Virus record (IMG/VR): IMGVR_UViG_3300035070_002626
Location: 124,001-188,000 of that record
Length of the DNA stretch: 64,000 nt
Direction: 5' to 3' (one strand)
Of this stretch, positions 17,308-59,004 are shown piece by piece. Each line of letters opens with the position of its first letter. Positions within the stretch are counted from its first letter, which is position 1. Made by a program: the position numbers and the translations under genes. The notes beneath the pieces were generated by a model. It saw only the letters and a program-made list of their open reading frames with translations. It was not told the DNA's origin and did no database searches.

Positions 17308-17391
17308 TGGTACTCGCACCCGGACTCGAACCGGGACGCCCTACGGCCACAGATTTTAAGTCTGTTATGTCTACCATTCCATCATGCGAGC
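17308..17391 (-). tRNA. tRNA-Leu (TAA)
   Basis: GCTCGCA/TGCGAGT acceptor stem, ACAGA-CTTAAAA-TCTGT anticodon arm, long variable arm, GGTTCGAGTCC, encoded CCA. Confidence 0.95.
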
Positions 17392-17393
17392 GT

Positions 17394-17470
17394 TGGTGCT
17401 CCCGGTAGGACTCGAACCTACGACCGACCCGTTATGAGCGGGGCGCTCTAACCAACTGAGCTACAGGAGC
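17394..17470 (-). tRNA. tRNA with CAT anticodon, probably tRNA-Ile2 (lysidine) rather than Met
   Basis: GCTCCTG..TAGCTCAGTTGGTTAGAGC..CCCG-CTCATAA-CGGG..GGTTCGAGTCC..ACCA; lacks the initiator C1:A72 mismatch and GGG:CCC anticodon stem. Confidence 0.9.
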
Positions 17471-54168: not shown

Positions 54169-55632
54169 TCACTCATTCCACTTTAACTTTTCTACAGTAA
54201 ATGGATAGTTTGCTTCTTTGTAAAATTGTTTACGTTTAGTTAAATGCCTTTTGGCAAATCTACAAGTTGACGTTATATCCCAAATTTGCACATGGTCTTT
54301 GTCTTCTGCTTTTCGAATACCACGGCCAATACTTTGTATAACCCTTACAAAACTTTTACCTGGCTCTAGTAGTACAAGATTAAAAATACGTGGTAAATTA
54401 ATACCCACAGCCGCAACACCGTATGTTGCAATAATAATTTTACCAGTTGATGTGGCTATTTCATCATACTCGTCTTGGCGTTCTTTGGATTTGGTTGCAC
54501 CACTTACAAATACAGCGTTGTCTCCTAGTCTGCTTAACAGTTCTTGTCCTGCTGATATTCTGTCTACTAGCACAAGAGTATTACCGGTTTTGTTTACTTC
54601 CAAAACTACTCCGGAGATTGTGTCTAGTCTGCCCTTGTCTTCAAACAGATATTTTAGTTCACTTTGATAGTTTGTAAACTCAGCATTGTCTACTAGCTGC
54701 ACCACATTCACGTGGCAGTTTGCAAGTACACCTTTTTCCTGTAGCTCACTGGCTGCAAGTTGATTGATCACTGGGCCCAGCCCAACGTGCAGTGCTTGAA
54801 ATTCAAATTGTTCTTTGGGCACTGTGCCTGTTAGTCCCCAGCGCAGCGGTATCTGGCTCATTACGCCGGTTAGCAGTGTTTTTAGTGCATCTGCTTTTGC
54901 CATGTGCACTTCGTCAACAATAACAGCCACAACGTCCTCTAAGAACTCGTGTATTGTAATATCTACTTTATGATTCTTGGTATTCTTTAGCAACACGTTT
55001 AAACTTTGCCATGTGCAAATTGTGTGCTTGTGTCCAAATTCTTTTCTGTCACCATAAAACACACCTACATCTAATTGCATGTTTATGTAATCTGCTTCAG
55101 TCTGTGTTACCAGACTTTTGTTTGGAACAATAATAATACTACGCCCGTAATTTTCAACACGTTCGCTCAGTGCCGCAGTCATGATAGTCTTGCCTGCACC
55201 TGTTGCAATTTCTTGTATGCACTGAGGATTTTCTAAAAATCGATTTACAATTTCAACTTGATAGTCACGCAGTTTAACTGACTGCCCAACTGCTGGATGA
55301 TTCTTTGGCCAAAGTATATCAGCATACGATTCTTCAGTTACTGGCTCGAACTTGAATGTGGTTTGATATTCTCTATTGTCTTGGACTTCGATGTCGTAGT
55401 TAAAGTCTTCGAGTATAGGAATAATGTCAGGTAGCAGGTTTAAATATGTACTGCCGCCCATTTGAAAGTATGCAACTTTGCCGTCCCAGCGGCCTAACCG
55501 AACTGCTGGCAAGTATCTTGCATGTGGCACATCATACTTAAAAGTATTAACCAGCTTCTTGCGAACATCCAGTTCTAAGCCAGTGATTTTTAAGTTAACT
55601 TCATCATTTATTACTAGTGTTGCTGTTCTCAT
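54169..55632 (-). CDS. uvsW: SF2 DNA helicase, UvsW-like
   Basis: WDGK, LRDYQ, ATGAGKT, DEVH, GLTGT, QSIGRGIR. Confidence 0.92.
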   Translation of the reverse strand: MRTATLVINDEVNLKITGLELDVRKKLVNTFKYDVPHARYLPAVRLGRWDGKVAYFQMGGSTYLNLLPDIIPILEDFNYDIEVQDNREYQTTFKFEPVTEESYADILWPKNHPAVGQSVKLRDYQVEIVNRFLENPQCIQEIATGAGKTIMTAALSERVENYGRSIIIVPNKSLVTQTEADYINMQLDVGVFYGDRKEFGHKHTICTWQSLNVLLKNTKNHKVDITIHEFLEDVVAVIVDEVHMAKADALKTLLTGVMSQIPLRWGLTGTVPKEQFEFQALHVGLGPVINQLAASELQEKGVLANCHVNVVQLVDNAEFTNYQSELKYLFEDKGRLDTISGVVLEVNKTGNTLVLVDRISAGQELLSRLGDNAVFVSGATKSKERQDEYDEIATSTGKIIIATYGVAAVGINLPRIFNLVLLEPGKSFVRVIQSIGRGIRKAEDKDHVQIWDITSTCRFAKRHLTKRKQFYKEANYPFTVEKLKWNE

Positions 55633-55637
55633 AATGT

Positions 55638-55666
55638 ATTATACCACATTTTTTCCATATAGTCAA
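55638..55666 (-). promoter_or_regulatory. Sigma70-type promoter (leaderless uvsW transcript)
   Basis: TTGACT-N17-TATAAT, 5 nt before ATG. Confidence 0.7.
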
Positions 55667-55676
55667 GATATATCGG

Positions 55677-56549
55677 TTAATAAACAAATACTGATTGTAT
55701 GTTGTTGTAGTTTTTTAAGTTGTCTAAAACTAATTGTTTGTCGTCATACCTTAACTGTGCTATTTTAATATGCCCAGTGGTTAGCTCAGGGTCGCCCCAA
55801 CGGTAGCCCTTATCATTGAAGTACGCTGCATTAGCATCATAAAATTCTTTACATTTATGAATAAAAAAGTTGTCAGTGTTATCATAAAAACCAACTTGAA
55901 AGTCTACGCTGTAGTGCAAATTTGGAACAAAATCATGATGGTGGTCGTCGTCATCAATTGCTAGTGCGTCCAAAGGCTTACCGACATCGGCATACAGAGT
56001 GTACATCCCGCCGAAGTCAACAGTGTTTACAAATAACTTATAATCCTCTTCAGTAAAACGTTCAGTCTTTGGCAAATCAAAGTACACCACTCTAAGTTTT
56101 GGATCAAGCCGTGCATGCCCTTCGCAACGATGTACAGTTTGATTGATGTGGCTGAGGCACTGTCGTAATTGATTTCCCTGTTCAGTCTGAAAAATAGGAT
56201 TAGTTTGCCAAGTATCTAATTGTCCATGATGCAACTCAAATACACTGTGCAGGTAATTCAAGGTATCTTGATCGTTAATGTCAGAAATATTTCTAGTAAA
56301 CATACCCGGGTGTATATTATTACAGGTGTTGATATTTTGATTTAAAAAATCAACTGTATACTGTGCATTCCATTGATCATTGAGATTGTACAATGCCCAA
56401 GGTTCACTGATGTTATCCTGGCGTTGTTGTGCATGTAAGAATCTATCAATCCATTTTGACAGAAAACTACTAGAGATTAAATCAAAGTTCAGATCATAAG
56501 TATCTTGATGATTGTCTTTTTTACTAAGTCTAACAGTTATGTTCTTCAT
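55677..56549 (-). CDS. Hypothetical protein
   Basis: QDTLNYLH..FE, IN..VHRCE, Y..VGK motifs. Confidence 0.7.
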   Translation of the reverse strand: MKNITVRLSKKDNHQDTYDLNFDLISSSFLSKWIDRFLHAQQRQDNISEPWALYNLNDQWNAQYTVDFLNQNINTCNNIHPGMFTRNISDINDQDTLNYLHSVFELHHGQLDTWQTNPIFQTEQGNQLRQCLSHINQTVHRCEGHARLDPKLRVVYFDLPKTERFTEEDYKLFVNTVDFGGMYTLYADVGKPLDALAIDDDDHHHDFVPNLHYSVDFQVGFYDNTDNFFIHKCKEFYDANAAYFNDKGYRWGDPELTTGHIKIAQLRYDDKQLVLDNLKNYNNIQSVFVY

Positions 56550-56567
56550 ATAATCTCGTTTTTCTTT

Positions 56568-56603
56568 TAAAAGGGCGGGCAGTGCATGATGCAACTGCCC
56601 GCC
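56568..56603 (-). terminator. Rho-independent terminator after the AAA ATPase gene
   Basis: GGCGGGCAG/CTGCCCGCC stem followed by TTTT on the minus strand. Confidence 0.7.
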
Positions 56604-56609
56604 AAGTGC

Positions 56610-56643
56610 TAGATCGCCTAGGAGCTAGATATCTGGCGATCTA
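56610..56643 (-). promoter_or_regulatory. 3'UTR hairpin whose loop is complementary to the RBS of the same gene
   Basis: TAGATCGCC/GGCGATCTA stem; loop UCUAGCUCCU pairs with AGGAGCUAGA at 57463-57472. Confidence 0.6.
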
Positions 56644-56645
56644 CT

Positions 56646-57461
56646 TCACCTACGGCGCATAACAGTGTTCTCTGCAAGTTCTTTCCAATTCGGAGATACC
56701 TTTGTAAGATCAGCTATTTTGAGTGCCATACGTAAACTCATTTCACGTAATGTTTCTTTTTTGTCGTTCATAAAGCCAAGTATTGCGTTTTCTTGTTCTT
56801 TAGATATATCGTACCCATTAAACAGTTCGCCTGTGTTGCAAATTTGTTTGATGCGCAGATATTTGTCACGCATTGTATCTAGTGTAAGATCTAGATAGTG
56901 GCAACGGCTTTGCAATGCTTCGAGGTGATCCTGCATTTTTTTGCTGCGAATGTTTTCAAACTTAACGTTGGTAATAAAAATAACACCGCCTTTGAATTCA
57001 AACTTGTTTGGAATACCTTCTGCACGAAGTTTTGCACTATCTGCATTCCAATGCAGTACACGCTTCTTACCACTGTCCAGTGCAGCTTTTAGGATGTTGA
57101 GACTGAGCTCATCCATTAGCACACTGTCACAGTCATCAAATACCAGCACATGATTCTTGTCTGCGTGTTCATATAATTTGGCATACAATCCTAGTGCAGT
57201 CATTGCACCTTTAACTACTTCATATTTGATACTGCGCCCAGCAATAGCATCCATCATCGAACTTTTGTCTAGTTCTTTTTCAACACCGTATGATTTACCC
57301 ACACCCGGAGGTCCAGTTACAATCATTGCACGAACATCGCCTGCGATAACCGCTTTGGTCATATCGTGTAAGATATCAAATCGAGTTTCGATGCGTTTCA
57401 TTACTGCATCATCAGATTCAAATTTAATTGTTTCTGCTTGTTTTTGCTTTAGTTTAGGCAT
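56646..57461 (-). CDS. AAA+ family ATPase (large-phage type)
   Basis: GPPGVGKS Walker A, LVFDDCD Walker B, FITN, ALQSR. Confidence 0.88.
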   Translation of the reverse strand: MPKLKQKQAETIKFESDDAVMKRIETRFDILHDMTKAVIAGDVRAMIVTGPPGVGKSYGVEKELDKSSMMDAIAGRSIKYEVVKGAMTALGLYAKLYEHADKNHVLVFDDCDSVLMDELSLNILKAALDSGKKRVLHWNADSAKLRAEGIPNKFEFKGGVIFITNVKFENIRSKKMQDHLEALQSRCHYLDLTLDTMRDKYLRIKQICNTGELFNGYDISKEQENAILGFMNDKKETLREMSLRMALKIADLTKVSPNWKELAENTVMRRR

Positions 57462-57504
57462 TTCTAGCTCCTTACAGTGTTTGCTTTTTTAGCTTATGTA
57501 TAAC

Positions 57505-57533
57505 ATTATAAGATAGTTTTATTGTGCTGTCAA
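57505..57533 (-). promoter_or_regulatory. Consensus sigma70 promoter of the AAA ATPase gene
   Basis: TTGACA-N17-TATAAT. Confidence 0.8.
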
Positions 57534-57537
57534 CCTT

Positions 57538-57633
57538 TTAGTTAACAATATAGCAAATAATTCCAACAAGTGCAATTAAAGACATAACATCGGAAGTAAA
57601 TTGAATTGCTAAATTTTTAAATAAACTCGTCAT
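57538..57633 (-). CDS. Small hydrophobic peptide (31 aa)
   Basis: MTSLFKNLAIQFTSDVMSLIALVGIICYIVN; ATGA coupling. Confidence 0.5.
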   Translation of the reverse strand: MTSLFKNLAIQFTSDVMSLIALVGIICYIVN

Positions 57634-57800
57634 TTTTTACCTTTAGGGCCAGGATTTGCTTTTGGCCGACCTCGCTTGCGTTGCCACGGATTTATCAAAA
57701 GTTCTTCAGTGCGAGCATTGGGTTCACACACTGTGATTTCGTTGCCCTTGGCTAGCCATTCGTCAATGACCTCTTGCGGAGTGGGTTCATGATTTGACAA
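57630..57800 (-). CDS. Small protein (56 aa) with a SutA-like motif and an AT-hook
   Basis: TTG start with AAAGGA RBS; IDEWLAKGNEITVC and RKRGRPK. Confidence 0.65.
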   Translation of the reverse strand: MSNHEPTPQEVIDEWLAKGNEITVCEPNARTEELLINPWQRKRGRPKANPGPKGKK

Positions 57801-57824
57801 TATATTTTCCTTTCTTTTTTTATC

Positions 57825-57917
57825 TTATACAATAATCATTGCTATTGCAATTATAGGAATTACAATAAATGCAACAGTTAGCGATATGTGTATGATTTGC
57901 CATATAACTTTATTCAT
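57825..57917 (-). CDS. Small hydrophobic peptide (30 aa)
   Basis: MNKVIWQIIHISLTVAFIVIPIIAIAMIIV. Confidence 0.45.
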   Translation of the reverse strand: MNKVIWQIIHISLTVAFIVIPIIAIAMIIV

Positions 57918-57922
57918 CTGTG

Positions 57923-58153
57923 TTAACTCTTTTTGCATTTCATAATCATGTCATGTGCATCAGTGTATGTACTCATATCATTGACTAGTGCATCAATACT
58001 GTCAAGTATAACCAACTCAACTAGTACAGCAACTTCGTCCCTTTGCTTAGGTGGTAATGTAACAACCCAATCAAGTAGATCGCTTTCTTTATCTACAGAC
58101 CAAATTTTATCTAGTAGATTTTTTTGATATTGTGATAATCCATCATTTAGCAT
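57923..58153 (-). CDS. Hypothetical protein
   Basis: MLNDGLSQYQKNLLDKIW...; AAGGA RBS. Confidence 0.7.
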   Translation of the reverse strand: MLNDGLSQYQKNLLDKIWSVDKESDLLDWVVTLPPKQRDEVAVLVELVILDSIDALVNDMSTYTDAHDMIMKCKKS

Positions 58154-58310
58154 TATTGCGTTCCTTGAACATACGCTTGAGTACATATTTGTGTTTGTTA
58201 AAGTAATAGGTGTCGTCGTAACAAACTAACTCGTTGGTCCAGTTGTAAATTTCATCTTTGTGTTCAAACCACTTGTCTTGACAAAATTTCCTAAACTTTG
58301 AAATTTGCAT
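58143..58310 (-). CDS. Small hypothetical protein (55 aa)
   Basis: MQISKFRKFCQDKWFEHKDE...; AGGAG RBS, promoter upstream. Confidence 0.7.
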   Translation of the reverse strand: MQISKFRKFCQDKWFEHKDEIYNWTNELVCYDDTYYFNKHKYVLKRMFKERNNAK

Positions 58311-58338
58311 ATTTGTACACTCCTGCGTTTATAGTAGT

Positions 58339-58367
58339 ATACTAGCACAGTGCAACAGCAATGTCAA
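58339..58367 (-). promoter_or_regulatory. Sigma70-type promoter
   Basis: TTGACA-N17-TAGTAT. Confidence 0.55.
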
Positions 58368-58368
58368 G

Positions 58369-58394
58369 AAAAAAGCACCCGCAAAGGTGCTTTT
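58369..58394. terminator. Bidirectional intrinsic terminator
   Basis: AAAAGCACC-CGCAAA-GGTGCTTTT. Confidence 0.75.
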
Positions 58395-58416
58395 AACTTA
58401 GTTTATGTGTTATTCT

Positions 58417-59004
58417 TTACCAAGCGGACCATTTTGCTGGGCATCTGGCTGAGCACGTAAATACATCGCCTGCTTCTAGCCCAAAGAACCAACCAAGGTA
58501 TGTTGGAGCATCGCTAGGTCCTGTTGGTATATACCCTTCTGCAATCACTGGGGCAGATCCATTAATTAAAATGTTGCTTCTATCTGCAAAGTAATCATTT
58601 GGATCATCATCAGAAGTAAGTGTAGCATAACCCGGCCATGGATACGGTTTTAAAAACCCTGCGCCTACTAGATTAAAGCTCTCAGTGATACCTTTACTGC
58701 CTAATGATGCATCTTCGCTGTTTACTCCATCTGTGCTAAACCACAATGATCCGAGATTTAACGAACCCGAATTAACTGTTACACTTAATGTGTGTTCATG
58801 TAACGCACCGTCATCGTCATCTTCAAATGTCCAGGTTCCGATTAACTCGAAGCCTTCCTCATCATCTGGGCCCGGGCCAGCCCATACGCCATCTCTGGTA
58901 ACCGGAGTCACTGCACCTGTTTGCACTTCTGCGCCGTCCCAGAGGATGGTTAAATCTGCTGTTGATACACTTGTACCTAACAATTTTACTGTTCTTAATG
59001 CCAT
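58417..59004 (-). CDS. Acidic beta-rich hypothetical protein (monocistronic late gene)
   Basis: AGGA RBS, own terminator, structured leader. Confidence 0.7.
   Translation of the reverse strand: MALRTVKLLGTSVSTADLTILWDGAEVQTGAVTPVTRDGVWAGPGPDDEEGFELIGTWTFEDDDDGALHEHTLSVTVNSGSLNLGSLWFSTDGVNSEDASLGSKGITESFNLVGAGFLKPYPWPGYATLTSDDDPNDYFADRSNILINGSAPVIAEGYIPTGPSDAPTYLGWFFGLEAGDVFTCSARCPAKWSAW

What the first reader, a model, noticed from the sequence alone, without database searches (positions are those of the whole stretch)
56568..57472. 3'UTR hairpin loop complementary to the gene's own ribosome-binding site
Seen: immediately after the AAA ATPase stop, a 9-bp stem (56610-56643) displays a loop containing UCUAGCUCCU, a perfect 10-nt complement of the leader AGGAGCUAGA (57463-57472). 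The match extends to 12 of 13 nt into the AUG, and a strong terminator follows. The gene has a perfect consensus sigma70 promoter. Established: 5'-3' fold-back silencing occurs in type I toxin mRNAs such as hok. Inference: only nascent transcripts are translated, or a 3'-derived sRNA represses the gene, giving a pulse of a possibly toxic ATPase.
Basis: partly seen in the sequence, partly recalled or inferred. Interest (0 to 1): 0.72.

Follow-up and report, generated by a model that had tools for sequence, protein, structure and literature searches.

The report
3' hairpin masks own ribosome site
In a marine jumbo phage, the tail of one early mRNA carries a hairpin whose loop is complementary to that mRNA's own ribosome-binding site; dozens of related phages keep the match while both sequences change together, so it is very likely a built-in translation brake.

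Summary
The gene at 56646-57461 (- strand) encodes an AAA+ protein related to T4 NrdC.10. It has a perfect sigma70 promoter. After the stop come a 9-bp hairpin with a 16-nt loop and a terminator. The loop's UCUAGCUCCU is the exact complement of AGGAGCUAGA at the Shine-Dalgarno site (12 of 13 nt into the AUG).

One 10-mer in a 300-kb genome is not beyond chance (about 0.1-0.3 expected). Comparison with relatives carries the case:
- In about 140 related viral contigs the hairpin stem covaries (8 of 9 pairs).
- Different lineages carry different matched pairs: GGAGCCAACCA/UGGUUGGCUCC, GGGCUAGAAA/UUUCUAGCCC, AGAGAGAGAG/CUCUCUCUCU, GGGGAUGACUAA/UUAGUCAUCCCC and AGGAGCUAUA/UAUAGCUCCU.
- Own leader against own 3' region beats cross-lineage pairings (p<5e-5).
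- Where small ORFs follow the ATPase gene, the hairpin stays next to the terminator, 100-470 nt downstream, and still matches the ATPase site.

Most likely the loop pairs with the initiation region and blocks ribosomes. It could act within one mRNA, as in icaR, or from a 3' fragment, as with OppZ/CarZ; this is unresolved. Repression, a pulse of expression and toxicity are untested. T4-like cultured phages lack the element. It is a new, phage-borne variant of a known kind.

The parts
57505..57533 (-). sigma70-type promoter: TTGACA (57533-57528), 17-nt spacer, TATAAT (57510-57505)
   Evidence: 12 of 12 consensus match. A promoter is kept with the gene in relatives.
57462..57499 (-). 5' leader of about 38 nt. 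The transcription start near 57499-57497 is inferred from the -10 position and was not mapped.
   Evidence: Sequence read. The leader is A-rich and weakly folded; the target 10-mer has a mean unpaired probability of 0.62.
57460..57472 (-). Target of the loop: AGGAGCUAGA (57472-57463) is the Shine-Dalgarno site plus spacer. The match extends to 12 of 13 nt through the AU of the AUG.
   Evidence: RNAduplex gives -17.9 kcal/mol with the loop, against -11.7 for the next-best initiation region in the window.
56646..57461 (-). CDS of 271 aa: an AAA+ P-loop protein and homologue of T4 NrdC.10 (phrog_1250). It lacks the ~70-aa N-terminal domain that most family members have.
   Evidence: phrog_1250 E=2e-83. 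tblastn to T4 nrdC.10 gives 36% identity over 92% of the query. The AF2 model has pLDDT 93.7 and an AAA+ fold. N-terminal extensions are seen in relatives.
56610..56643 (-). 3' hairpin: 9-bp stem (56643-56635 with 56618-56610) and 16-nt loop (56634-56619)
   Evidence: Fold. In 15 relatives, 8 of 9 stem pairs show compensatory double changes.
56620..56629 (-). Anti-RBS sequence UCUAGCUCCU displayed in the loop
   Evidence: Exact reverse complement of 57472-57463. It is invariant or compensated in relatives.
56569..56603 (-). Intrinsic terminator: GGCGGGCAGU...ACUGCCCGCC stem, then C and UUUU
   Evidence: The simple scan did not call it because there are only 4 U. Relatives have the same stem with 5-8 U.

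Best explanation
The unit is a self-contained early transcription unit: promoter, ~38-nt leader, AAA+ gene, anti-RBS hairpin, terminator. Its last structured element before the terminator is a hairpin with an unusually large loop. That loop base-pairs with the Shine-Dalgarno/start region of the first gene on the same transcript. The duplex is 10-13 bp (about -18 kcal/mol here, -14 to -24 in relatives) and competes with 30S binding, so it shuts off translation of the ATPase. The partner is made last, about 850 nt after the RBS (up to ~1500 nt in operonic relatives). Ribosomes can therefore load while the mRNA is still being made, and the finished mRNA tends to lock itself. This would cap the protein yield per transcript. 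A stable 3' fragment (hairpin plus terminator) may add repression in trans. Shown: the complementarity, the RNA hairpin and its covariation, the co-variation of loop and RBS, and the link of the hairpin to the terminator. Inferred: that pairing happens in vivo, that it represses, and that it acts in cis.
For: (1) Exact 10-nt and 12-of-13 complement, with the loop displayed on a 9-bp stem.
(2) The stem covaries: 8 of 9 pairs have double compensatory changes while the loop core stays fixed.
(3) Independent matched pairs occur in different lineages, always at the SD/AUG region and in an unpaired loop. Examples: AGGAGCUAGAC/GUCUAGCUCCU (L006), AGGAGCUAUA/UAUAGCUCCU (L071, a G-C to U-A change), AGAGAGAGAG/CUCUCUCUCU (L022), GGAGGAGCAA/UUGCUCCUCC (L072), GGAGUGAGA (L122), GGGGAUGACUAA/UUAGUCAUCCCC (L157), GAUGACUAAC over the start codon (L160, L180), 13 bp with one bulge (L050, L169) and 18 bp in two blocks (L073).
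(4) In an operonic clade the hairpin sits 100-470 nt after the ATPase stop, directly before the terminator. It still matches the ATPase RBS: GGAGCCAACCA/UGGUUGGCUCC or GGGCUAGAAA/UUUCUAGCCC, in proteins 90% identical to each other.
(5) Permutation test: own leader against own 3' region beats cross-lineage pairs. With 17 clusters the mean run is 6.9 vs 5.4 nt, p<=5e-5. With 34 clusters it is 7.43 vs 6.29, and no permutation of 20,000 reached the observed value in any of 30 draws.
(6) G.U pairs lie inside the helices (L144, L008), and a lost pair is offset by extension of the helix (L008).
(7) The feature is unique to this gene in the genome.
(8) Experiments elsewhere show that anti-SD-like sequences hundreds of nt downstream pair with the RBS in vivo, block initiation and speed decay (PMC12697547), and that a 3'UTR anti-SD motif represses icaR (PMC3868564).
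Against: There is no expression, structure-probing or RNA-end data for this phage. The metatranscriptome contigs were uninformative. About half of the lineages lack the match: short-form clades with only a terminator, L053, L057, and T4 and other cultured T4-like phages. The element is therefore dispensable for the gene family. Some lineages show only 6-7 nt, which is little more than a generic anti-SD. Ten pairs inside a 16-nt loop closed by a stem are topologically strained. In a few loci the anti-RBS lies in a linker or directly after the stop rather than in a loop (L047, L091, L156).
Confidence: 0.7

Rival explanations
1. The element works mainly in trans. The hairpin plus terminator (~80 nt) accumulates as a stable 3'-end-derived small RNA, either by processing or as a decay remnant. 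It pairs with the RBS of newly made ATPase mRNAs. This gives delayed negative feedback and early-gene shut-off, as OppZ and CarZ do for their own operons.
For: The anatomy fits a 3'-derived sRNA: seed in a loop, an A/U-rich spacer, then an intrinsic terminator. The module stays attached to the terminator rather than to the ATPase stop when ORFs intervene. In the operonic clade an AU-rich single-stranded stretch precedes the hairpin. Own-transcript autoregulation by 3' sRNAs has a precedent (PMC7398697). No internal promoter is present, so any such RNA would come from processing.
Against: No 3' fragment has been observed (one search was uninformative). In the window the sequence upstream of the hairpin is not AU-rich. 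Nothing is known about Hfq or RNase E in the unknown host. Covariation cannot separate cis from trans.
Confidence: 0.3
2. The 5'-3' pairing is protective or activating rather than repressive. It could close the mRNA to shield it from ribonucleases, as in B. subtilis hbs. It could also hold the RBS near the stop codon so that terminating ribosomes re-initiate.
For: A 5'/3'-UTR interaction that stabilises an mRNA exists (PMC5737220). In the window clade the stem starts 2-3 nt after the stop, so a terminating ribosome would melt it.
Against: The duplex covers the SD and often the AUG itself (L160, L180, L153), which cannot coexist with 30S binding. The distance from stop to stem varies from about 0 to 39 nt across lineages, so coupling to termination is not conserved.
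Confidence: 0.08
3. The match is a DNA-level inverted repeat. Possibilities are the ends of a mobile gene cassette, a recombination site, or two copies of a protein-binding site. Under this reading it has no role in RNA.
For: The gene with its promoter and terminator behaves as a cassette. The gene downstream of the terminator differs among near-identical relatives.
Against: The promoter and terminator lie outside the repeats and travel with the gene. One repeat is always embedded in the loop of a covarying stem. The other always lies on the SD/AUG, whatever its sequence. G.U pairs and bulges are tolerated. The 10-mer is not repeated elsewhere in the genome. No ORF on the opposite strand uses the loop's AGGAG as an SD.
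Confidence: 0.03
4. The match is chance plus a generic anti-SD: a pyrimidine-rich loop that would match any strong SD.
For: One 10-mer per 300-kb genome is not improbable (about 0.1-0.3 expected). Several lineages show only a CUCC-type match of 6-7 nt.
Against: The complement extends into lineage-specific spacer and start-codon sequence, and it changes together with that sequence. Own-versus-cross permutation gives p<5e-5. The loop's next-best initiation region in the window is 6 kcal/mol weaker.
Confidence: 0.02

Closest known systems
icaR mRNA 5'-3' UTR interaction, Staphylococcus aureus (PMC3868564)
   Same: An anti-SD motif in the 3'UTR of an mRNA pairs with the SD region of the same mRNA. 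It blocks the initiation complex and so limits synthesis of the encoded protein.
   Different: icaR has a long 3'UTR (longer than 100 nt) with a UCCCCUG motif, and it creates an RNase III substrate. It was described as a singular example in one bacterial genus. Here the 3'UTR is ~75-90 nt. The anti-RBS is displayed in the large loop of a hairpin directly before the terminator. The element is phage-borne. It is found in dozens of diverged lineages with loop/RBS covariation, and it also works across intervening ORFs. RNase III involvement is unknown.
OppZ and CarZ, autoregulatory 3'UTR-derived sRNAs of Vibrio cholerae (PMC7398697)
   Same: An RNA element at the 3' end of a transcription unit, including its terminator, is complementary to a translation initiation region of the same unit. 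This gives post-transcriptional negative feedback.
   Different: OppZ and CarZ are shown to be released by RNase E, to bind Hfq and to act in trans. OppZ targets an internal cistron and triggers Rho termination. Here no processed RNA has been seen, the target is the first cistron, and a cis mode is equally possible.
hok/sok fold-back inhibition (type I toxin-antitoxin); from established knowledge, not tested against a paper here
   Same: Long-range pairing between the 5' and 3' parts of one mRNA keeps the full-length transcript translationally silent.
   Different: In hok the very 5' end pairs with the 3' end. Activation needs 3' trimming. An antisense RNA (Sok) and a small membrane toxin are part of that system. 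None of these is present here: the protein is a 271-aa AAA+ ATPase, and the pairing is loop to RBS.
Long-range anti-SD-like sequences in Bacillus subtilis mRNAs (PMC12697547)
   Same: Pyrimidine-rich anti-SD-like 8-mers several hundred nt downstream pair with the RBS in vivo, inhibit initiation and promote decay. This is the same physical mechanism.
   Different: There such sequences are artificial substitutions, and in natural genes they are depleted by selection. Here one is positively maintained, extended beyond the SD core, and structurally displayed.
B. subtilis hbs mRNA 5'/3'-UTR interaction (PMC5737220)
   Same: Base pairing between the two UTRs of one bacterial mRNA.
   Different: In hbs the interaction controls ribonuclease access and stabilises the mRNA. 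It does not mask the SD.

Membership tests
icaR-type cis 5'-3' UTR translational repression | The 3'UTR contains a sequence complementary to the SD region of the same mRNA | tested here: met
   10 of 10 and 12 of 13 nt. The match is kept or compensated in relatives.
icaR-type cis 5'-3' UTR translational repression | The pairing prevents formation of the initiation complex and lowers protein output | not testable with these tools
   Needs toeprinting or reporter assays. It is only inferred from the overlap of the duplex with the SD/AUG.
icaR-type cis 5'-3' UTR translational repression | The duplex is an RNase III substrate | not testable with these tools
   No enzymatic or RNA-end data. The 10-13 bp duplex is short for RNase III (inference).
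OppZ/CarZ-type autoregulatory 3'UTR-derived sRNA | A discrete stable sRNA is released from the 3' end of the mRNA | tested here: inconclusive
   Metatranscriptome contigs cover the region but give no ends, strand or local depth. There is no internal promoter. The anatomy (hairpin plus terminator) is compatible.
OppZ/CarZ-type autoregulatory 3'UTR-derived sRNA | The seed is complementary to an initiation region within its own transcription unit | tested here: met
   The own RBS is the only strong target in the window (-17.9 against -11.7 kcal/mol).
OppZ/CarZ-type autoregulatory 3'UTR-derived sRNA | Dependence on Hfq and RNase E | not testable with these tools
   The host is unknown and no data exist.
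hok/sok-type type I toxin-antitoxin with fold-back inhibition | Small hydrophobic toxin peptide as the regulated product | tested here: not met
   The product is a 271-aa AAA+ protein.
hok/sok-type type I toxin-antitoxin with fold-back inhibition | A cis-encoded antisense RNA with its own promoter | tested here: not met
   The only opposite-strand promoter-like hits are weak 9-of-12 matches, no more than in shuffles. There is no Rfam match.
Any curated RNA family (Rfam 15) | Covariance-model match at E<=1 | tested here: not met
   No match in 55500-58500 on either strand.
T4 NrdC.10 protein family (phrog_1250) | Significant full-length similarity to family members | tested here: met
   phrog_1250 E=2e-83. 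1308 phage records match, including T4 nrdC.10. The window protein lacks the N-terminal ~70 aa.
AAA+ ATPase fold | P-loop alpha/beta base plus helical lid; Walker A and B motifs | tested here: met
   GPPGVGKS and VFDDCD are invariant. The model has pLDDT 93.7. The best structural matches are NorQ/CbbQ, Cdc6/Orc1, clamp loader and RuvB, TM about 0.5-0.55.
Intrinsic (Rho-independent) terminator | GC-rich stem followed by a U-run | tested here: inconclusive
   A strong 10-13 bp GC stem is present, but there are only 4 U, so the simple scan does not call it. Relatives have 5-8 U.
Promoter-stem-loop shuffling cassettes of T4-type phages (recalled from memory; a lead only) | The same promoter/stem-loop motif is repeated many times in the genome | tested here: not met
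   The loop/leader 10-mer occurs only at this gene. No other gene shows the feature.

The most novel reading that the evidence does not exclude
This is a dedicated, evolutionarily maintained 'self-locking mRNA' module. A terminator-proximal hairpin is transcribed last and closes on the first cistron's ribosome-binding site. Each transcript is then translated only during a co-transcriptional window, which sets a fixed protein quota per mRNA. The module is specific to one AAA+ gene family of environmental jumbo and T4-related phages. It is portable together with its promoter and terminator. It would be the first case of 5'-3' mRNA pairing in bacteria or phages that is supported by broad phylogenetic covariation.
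Probability: 0.45. Interest if true: 0.8.

Novelty: new variant of a known kind. Interest (0 to 1): 0.72.

Why it matters
Regulation of bacterial mRNAs by pairing between their two ends is known from only a few single-species cases (icaR, hbs, hok). Those cases have little comparative support. Here the same logic is written into a phage gene family and kept through many independent sequence replacements. That gives a natural series of compensatory 'mutants' and a clear design rule: the anti-RBS sits in a large loop immediately before the terminator, even when it is 1.5 kb from its target. This makes several points directly testable: whether such locks act in cis or through 3' fragments, how loop display affects long-range pairing, and why this AAA+ protein of unknown function (the T4 NrdC.10 family) must be dosed so tightly. 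It also offers a compact, orthogonal part for capping expression in synthetic constructs. Finally, it shows that 3' ends of phage genes deserve annotation.

Tried and rejected
- DNA search of the phage collection with the 1.3-kb region found nothing.
- Rfam at a permissive threshold found nothing.
- PADLOC, NCBIfam and PDB sequence searches gave no functional name for the protein.
- Metatranscriptome evidence was uninformative. Four RNA runs hold related contigs, but contigs carry no strand, ends or local depth and may derive from DNA. There is therefore no evidence for or against a 3' fragment.
- Cultured relatives were checked so that a laboratory system could be named. T4, Cronobacter S13, Enterobacter PG7, Acinetobacter Konradin, Vibrio D481 and D507, Aeromonas 44RR2.8t and E. 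coli JNE01 have no such complement. The PA5oct/Paride group has an 8-nt match (AGUAGCAU) to the 3' arm of a small closed hairpin. This could be chance (about 0.03) and has no covariation data.
- A genome-wide search for other genes using the same trick found none within 75 nt of their stops. There was no excess within 3 kb downstream compared with an upstream control.
- The idea that a terminating ribosome must melt the hairpin was not supported. The stop-to-stem distance ranges from about 0 to 39 nt, so it is not conserved.
- The opposite-strand reading, with the loop's AGGAG serving as an SD for a + strand gene, was rejected. No start codon lies within range.
- At 70% single-linkage clustering only 9 clusters remain and the test loses power (median p = 0.08).

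Full report
**What is in the sequence.**
All features lie on the - strand.
- A perfect sigma70-type promoter, TTGACA-17-TATAAT, at 57533-57505.
- A leader of about 38 nt.
- The Shine-Dalgarno region AGGAGCUAGA at 57472-57463, followed by the AUG at 57461.
- A 271-codon ORF that ends with UGA at 56646.
- Two nt later, a hairpin with a 9-bp stem (56643-56635 paired with 56618-56610) and a 16-nt loop (56634-56619).
- Six nt further on, a GC-rich terminator stem (56603-56574) followed by UUUU.

The loop contains UCUAGCUCCU (56629-56620), the exact complement of the leader 10-mer. The match extends to 12 of 13 nt, into the AUG. The 3' region folds far better than shuffles (-42.2 kcal/mol, z = -4.5).

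**Is it more than chance in this genome?**
The window belongs to a 299,910-bp, 40% GC phage genome. This is a marine jumbo phage, distantly related to the PA5oct-like and Phosso phages.
- The 10-mer occurs only at these two places in the genome.
- Of 78 ORFs in the window and 379 in the genome, this is the only gene whose initiation region has a 10-nt complement within 75 nt after its own stop.
- The loop's best target among all initiation regions in the window is its own RBS, at -17.9 kcal/mol against -11.7 for the runner-up.

Even so, a 10-mer between a 23-nt and a 75-nt segment is expected about 0.1-0.3 times per genome. The single-genome observation is suggestive, not conclusive.

**Comparative evidence, set 1.**
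The protein is a homologue of T4 NrdC.10 (phrog_1250, E=2e-83). Two scans of viral contigs gave 106 loci at 54-100% identity.
- Within the window's clade the hairpin stem changes sequence but keeps pairing. Of 9 pairs, 8 show double compensatory changes, while the loop core UAGCUCCU is invariant.
- The gene downstream of the terminator differs among near-identical relatives. The promoter, leader, hairpin and terminator all travel with the ATPase gene.

More diverged lineages carry other matched pairs. These always lie at the SD/start region and in the unpaired loop of the first 3' hairpin:

| Locus | Leader / loop |
|---|---|
| L006 | AGGAGCUAGAC / GUCUAGCUCCU |
| L071 | AGGAGCUAUA / UAUAGCUCCU (a G-C to U-A exchange) |
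| L022 | AGAGAGAGAG / CUCUCUCUCU |
| L077 | GGAGAGAGA |
| L072 | GGAGGAGCAA / UUGCUCCUCC |
| L078 | CAGGAGCUA |
| L058, L063, L102 | GGAGCGA |
| L023 | GUGAGAG |
| L050 clade | 13 bp with one bulge |
| L073 | 18 bp in two blocks |

**Comparative evidence, set 2: the operonic clade.**
A third scan, ranked on a distant member, gave 80 more loci. New matched pairs appear:
- GGAGUGAGA in L122.
- CUAGGAGA in L162.
- GGGGAUGACUAA / UUAGUCAUCCCC in L157.
- The same loop pairing with the start codon and codons 2-3 (GAUGACUAAC) in L160 and L180.

The most telling case is a clade in which one to three small ORFs follow the ATPase gene. There the first 80 nt after the ATPase stop show nothing. Instead, 100-470 nt further on, immediately before the terminator, sits a hairpin whose loop matches the ATPase RBS. 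The pair is GGAGCCAACCA(UG)/UGGUUGGCUCC in ten listed contigs. A 9-nt version occurs where the leader differs. In three contigs the pair is GGGCUAGAAA/UUUCUAGCCC. The proteins of these two sub-types are 90% identical.

The layout in L153 was read base by base: promoter, leader, ATPase, a 49-codon hydrophobic ORF, the anti-RBS hairpin, the terminator, then the next promoter. The element therefore belongs to the 3' end of the transcript and aims at the first cistron's RBS.

**Statistics.**
The leader (-20..+3) was paired with the 3' region of its own locus or of other lineages, using one representative per protein cluster.

| Clustering | Mean longest run, own vs cross | Duplex energy, own vs cross | Permutation p |
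|---|---|---|---|
| 17 clusters below 80% identity | 6.9 vs 5.4 nt | -13.4 vs -10.6 kcal/mol | <=5e-5 (run) and <=8e-4 (energy) in every draw |
| 138 pooled loci, 480 nt downstream, 34 clusters | 7.43 vs 6.29 nt | not computed | none of 20,000 permutations reached it, in any of 30 draws |

Independent drift of the two partners from a common ancestor would degrade own and cross pairs equally. An own-over-cross excess therefore means co-variation. About half of the 68 clusters at 90% identity have a match of at least 8 nt, although a few of these are trivial A-run/U-run hits.

**RNA level or DNA level?**
Several points argue for RNA.
- The helices contain G.U pairs (L144, L008) and single-nt bulges (L050, L169).
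- In L008 a lost pair is offset by extension of the helix on the other side.
- One partner is always in the loop of a covarying stem, and the other is always on the SD/AUG.
- The promoter and terminator lie outside the 'repeats'.
- No opposite-strand gene could use the loop as an SD.

A transposon-like or protein-site reading is therefore unlikely.

**Who lacks it.**
The following have no such complement: T4, S13, PG7, Konradin, two Vibrio phages, 44RR2.8t, JNE01, several short-form clades that have only a terminator, and loci such as L053 and L057. The PA5oct/Paride group has an 8-nt match to the closed 3' arm of a small hairpin, which could be chance. The element is thus a lineage-restricted add-on found in uncultured marine and freshwater phages. 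No cultured phage with a convincing copy was found.

**The protein.**
Walker A (GPPGVGKS) and Walker B (VFDDCD) motifs are invariant. The AlphaFold model (pLDDT 93.7) has an AAA+ base-plus-lid fold. It is closest to the MoxR-type proteins NorQ/CbbQ, Cdc6/Orc1, clamp loaders and RuvB, at TM about 0.5-0.55. No function can be named. The window's protein lacks the ~70-residue N-terminal domain present in T4 NrdC.10 and most relatives. Nothing shows that it is toxic.

**Mechanism.**
- Shown: the complementarity, the structured display of the loop, the co-variation, and the terminator-proximal position.
- From established knowledge: a 10-13 bp duplex over the SD/AUG (-14 to -24 kcal/mol) out-competes the ~5-bp SD/anti-SD contact and excludes the 30S subunit. 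Anti-SD-like sequences hundreds of nt downstream do this in vivo (PMC12697547), as does the icaR 3'UTR (PMC3868564).
- Inferred: because the partner is transcribed last, ribosomes can load during transcription and the finished mRNA then locks. This would limit output per transcript. A stable hairpin-terminator fragment could also act in trans, as OppZ and CarZ do (PMC7398697).

Covariation cannot separate cis from trans, and no RNA-end data are available.

**Comparison with known systems, and novelty.**
The element works like icaR (cis) or OppZ/CarZ (trans). It is not a hok-type system: there is no small toxin, no antisense RNA and no end-to-end pairing. It matches no Rfam family. The literature searches turned up no phage example. 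The only paper that mentions nrdC.10 is a comparative genome description (PMC1524935). Four things are new:
- the phage setting;
- the loop display next to the terminator;
- action across intervening cistrons;
- the breadth of natural compensatory variation.

Noticed in passing
window 57541-57633 (- strand): A 31-codon ORF encodes a hydrophobic peptide (MTSLFKNLAIQFTSDVMSLIALVGIICYIVN). It ends just upstream of the ATPase promoter's -35 box, with no terminator in between. Read-through transcripts could therefore also carry the ATPase gene.
   Followed up: no
L153:1533-1681 and the equivalent ORFs after the ATPase gene in L165, L176 and L171: In the operonic clade the ORFs between the ATPase gene and the anti-RBS hairpin encode small hydrophobic, membrane-like peptides with a conserved LLNGW(L/F)AK motif. 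Their function is unknown.
   Followed up: partly
L153:1573-1581: A second 9-nt copy of the anti-RBS (UGGUUGGCU) lies inside the small ORF, about 110 nt upstream of the loop copy. It overlaps the codons for NGWL. It could be coincidence or a second, translation-gated anti-RBS.
   Followed up: no
L015, L041, L043 (leader -24..-15 against the terminator 5' arm): The leader's ACAACAUUGC is complementary to GCAAUGUUGU in the terminator stem (10 nt; with one G.U in L011). Sister contigs with other terminators lack this, so it may be chance or a second leader/3' contact.
   Followed up: partly
window 56646-57461, compared with L022, L023 and T4 nrdC.10 (L027:391-1368): The window's ATPase and its closest relatives are a short form. 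They lack the ~70-residue N-terminal domain (consensus M..[IV]L[IV]KNG.YRN...FVTVDG) present in most of the family.
   Followed up: partly
immediately downstream of the terminator: window about 56568; L001, L002, L003: Contigs with 99-100% identical ATPase genes carry three different genes right after the terminator. The terminator end therefore looks like a recombination junction, and the unit behaves as a shufflable cassette.
   Followed up: partly
whole genome G000 (window = 124001-188000): There are about 52 sigma70-like promoters with at least 11 of 12 consensus matches, 7 of them perfect, and most are on the - strand. This jumbo phage therefore appears to rely heavily on host sigma70 RNA polymerase. 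The 'perfect promoter' of this gene is typical for the phage.
   Followed up: partly
window 17308-17470 (- strand): Adjacent tRNA-Leu(UAA) and tRNA-Met(CAU) genes.
   Followed up: no
L161: 3' region at +0 and +71 after the stop: Two copies of the anti-RBS UGCCCUC(G), complementary to the leader's CGAGGGCA. One lies directly after the stop and one about 70 nt later.
   Followed up: no
L028 (Pseudomonas phage Paride, PA5oct group): 232-239 against 1440-1447: The leader's AGUAGCAU, between the SD and the AUG, equals the 5' arm and complements the 3' arm of the small hairpin after the stop. This is the only cultured-phage candidate for a related arrangement. No covariation data are available.
   Followed up: partly
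window 55677-56549 (- strand): The 290-aa protein encoded just downstream has no Pfam, PHROG or PADLOC match. It is replaced by other genes in close relatives.
   Followed up: no
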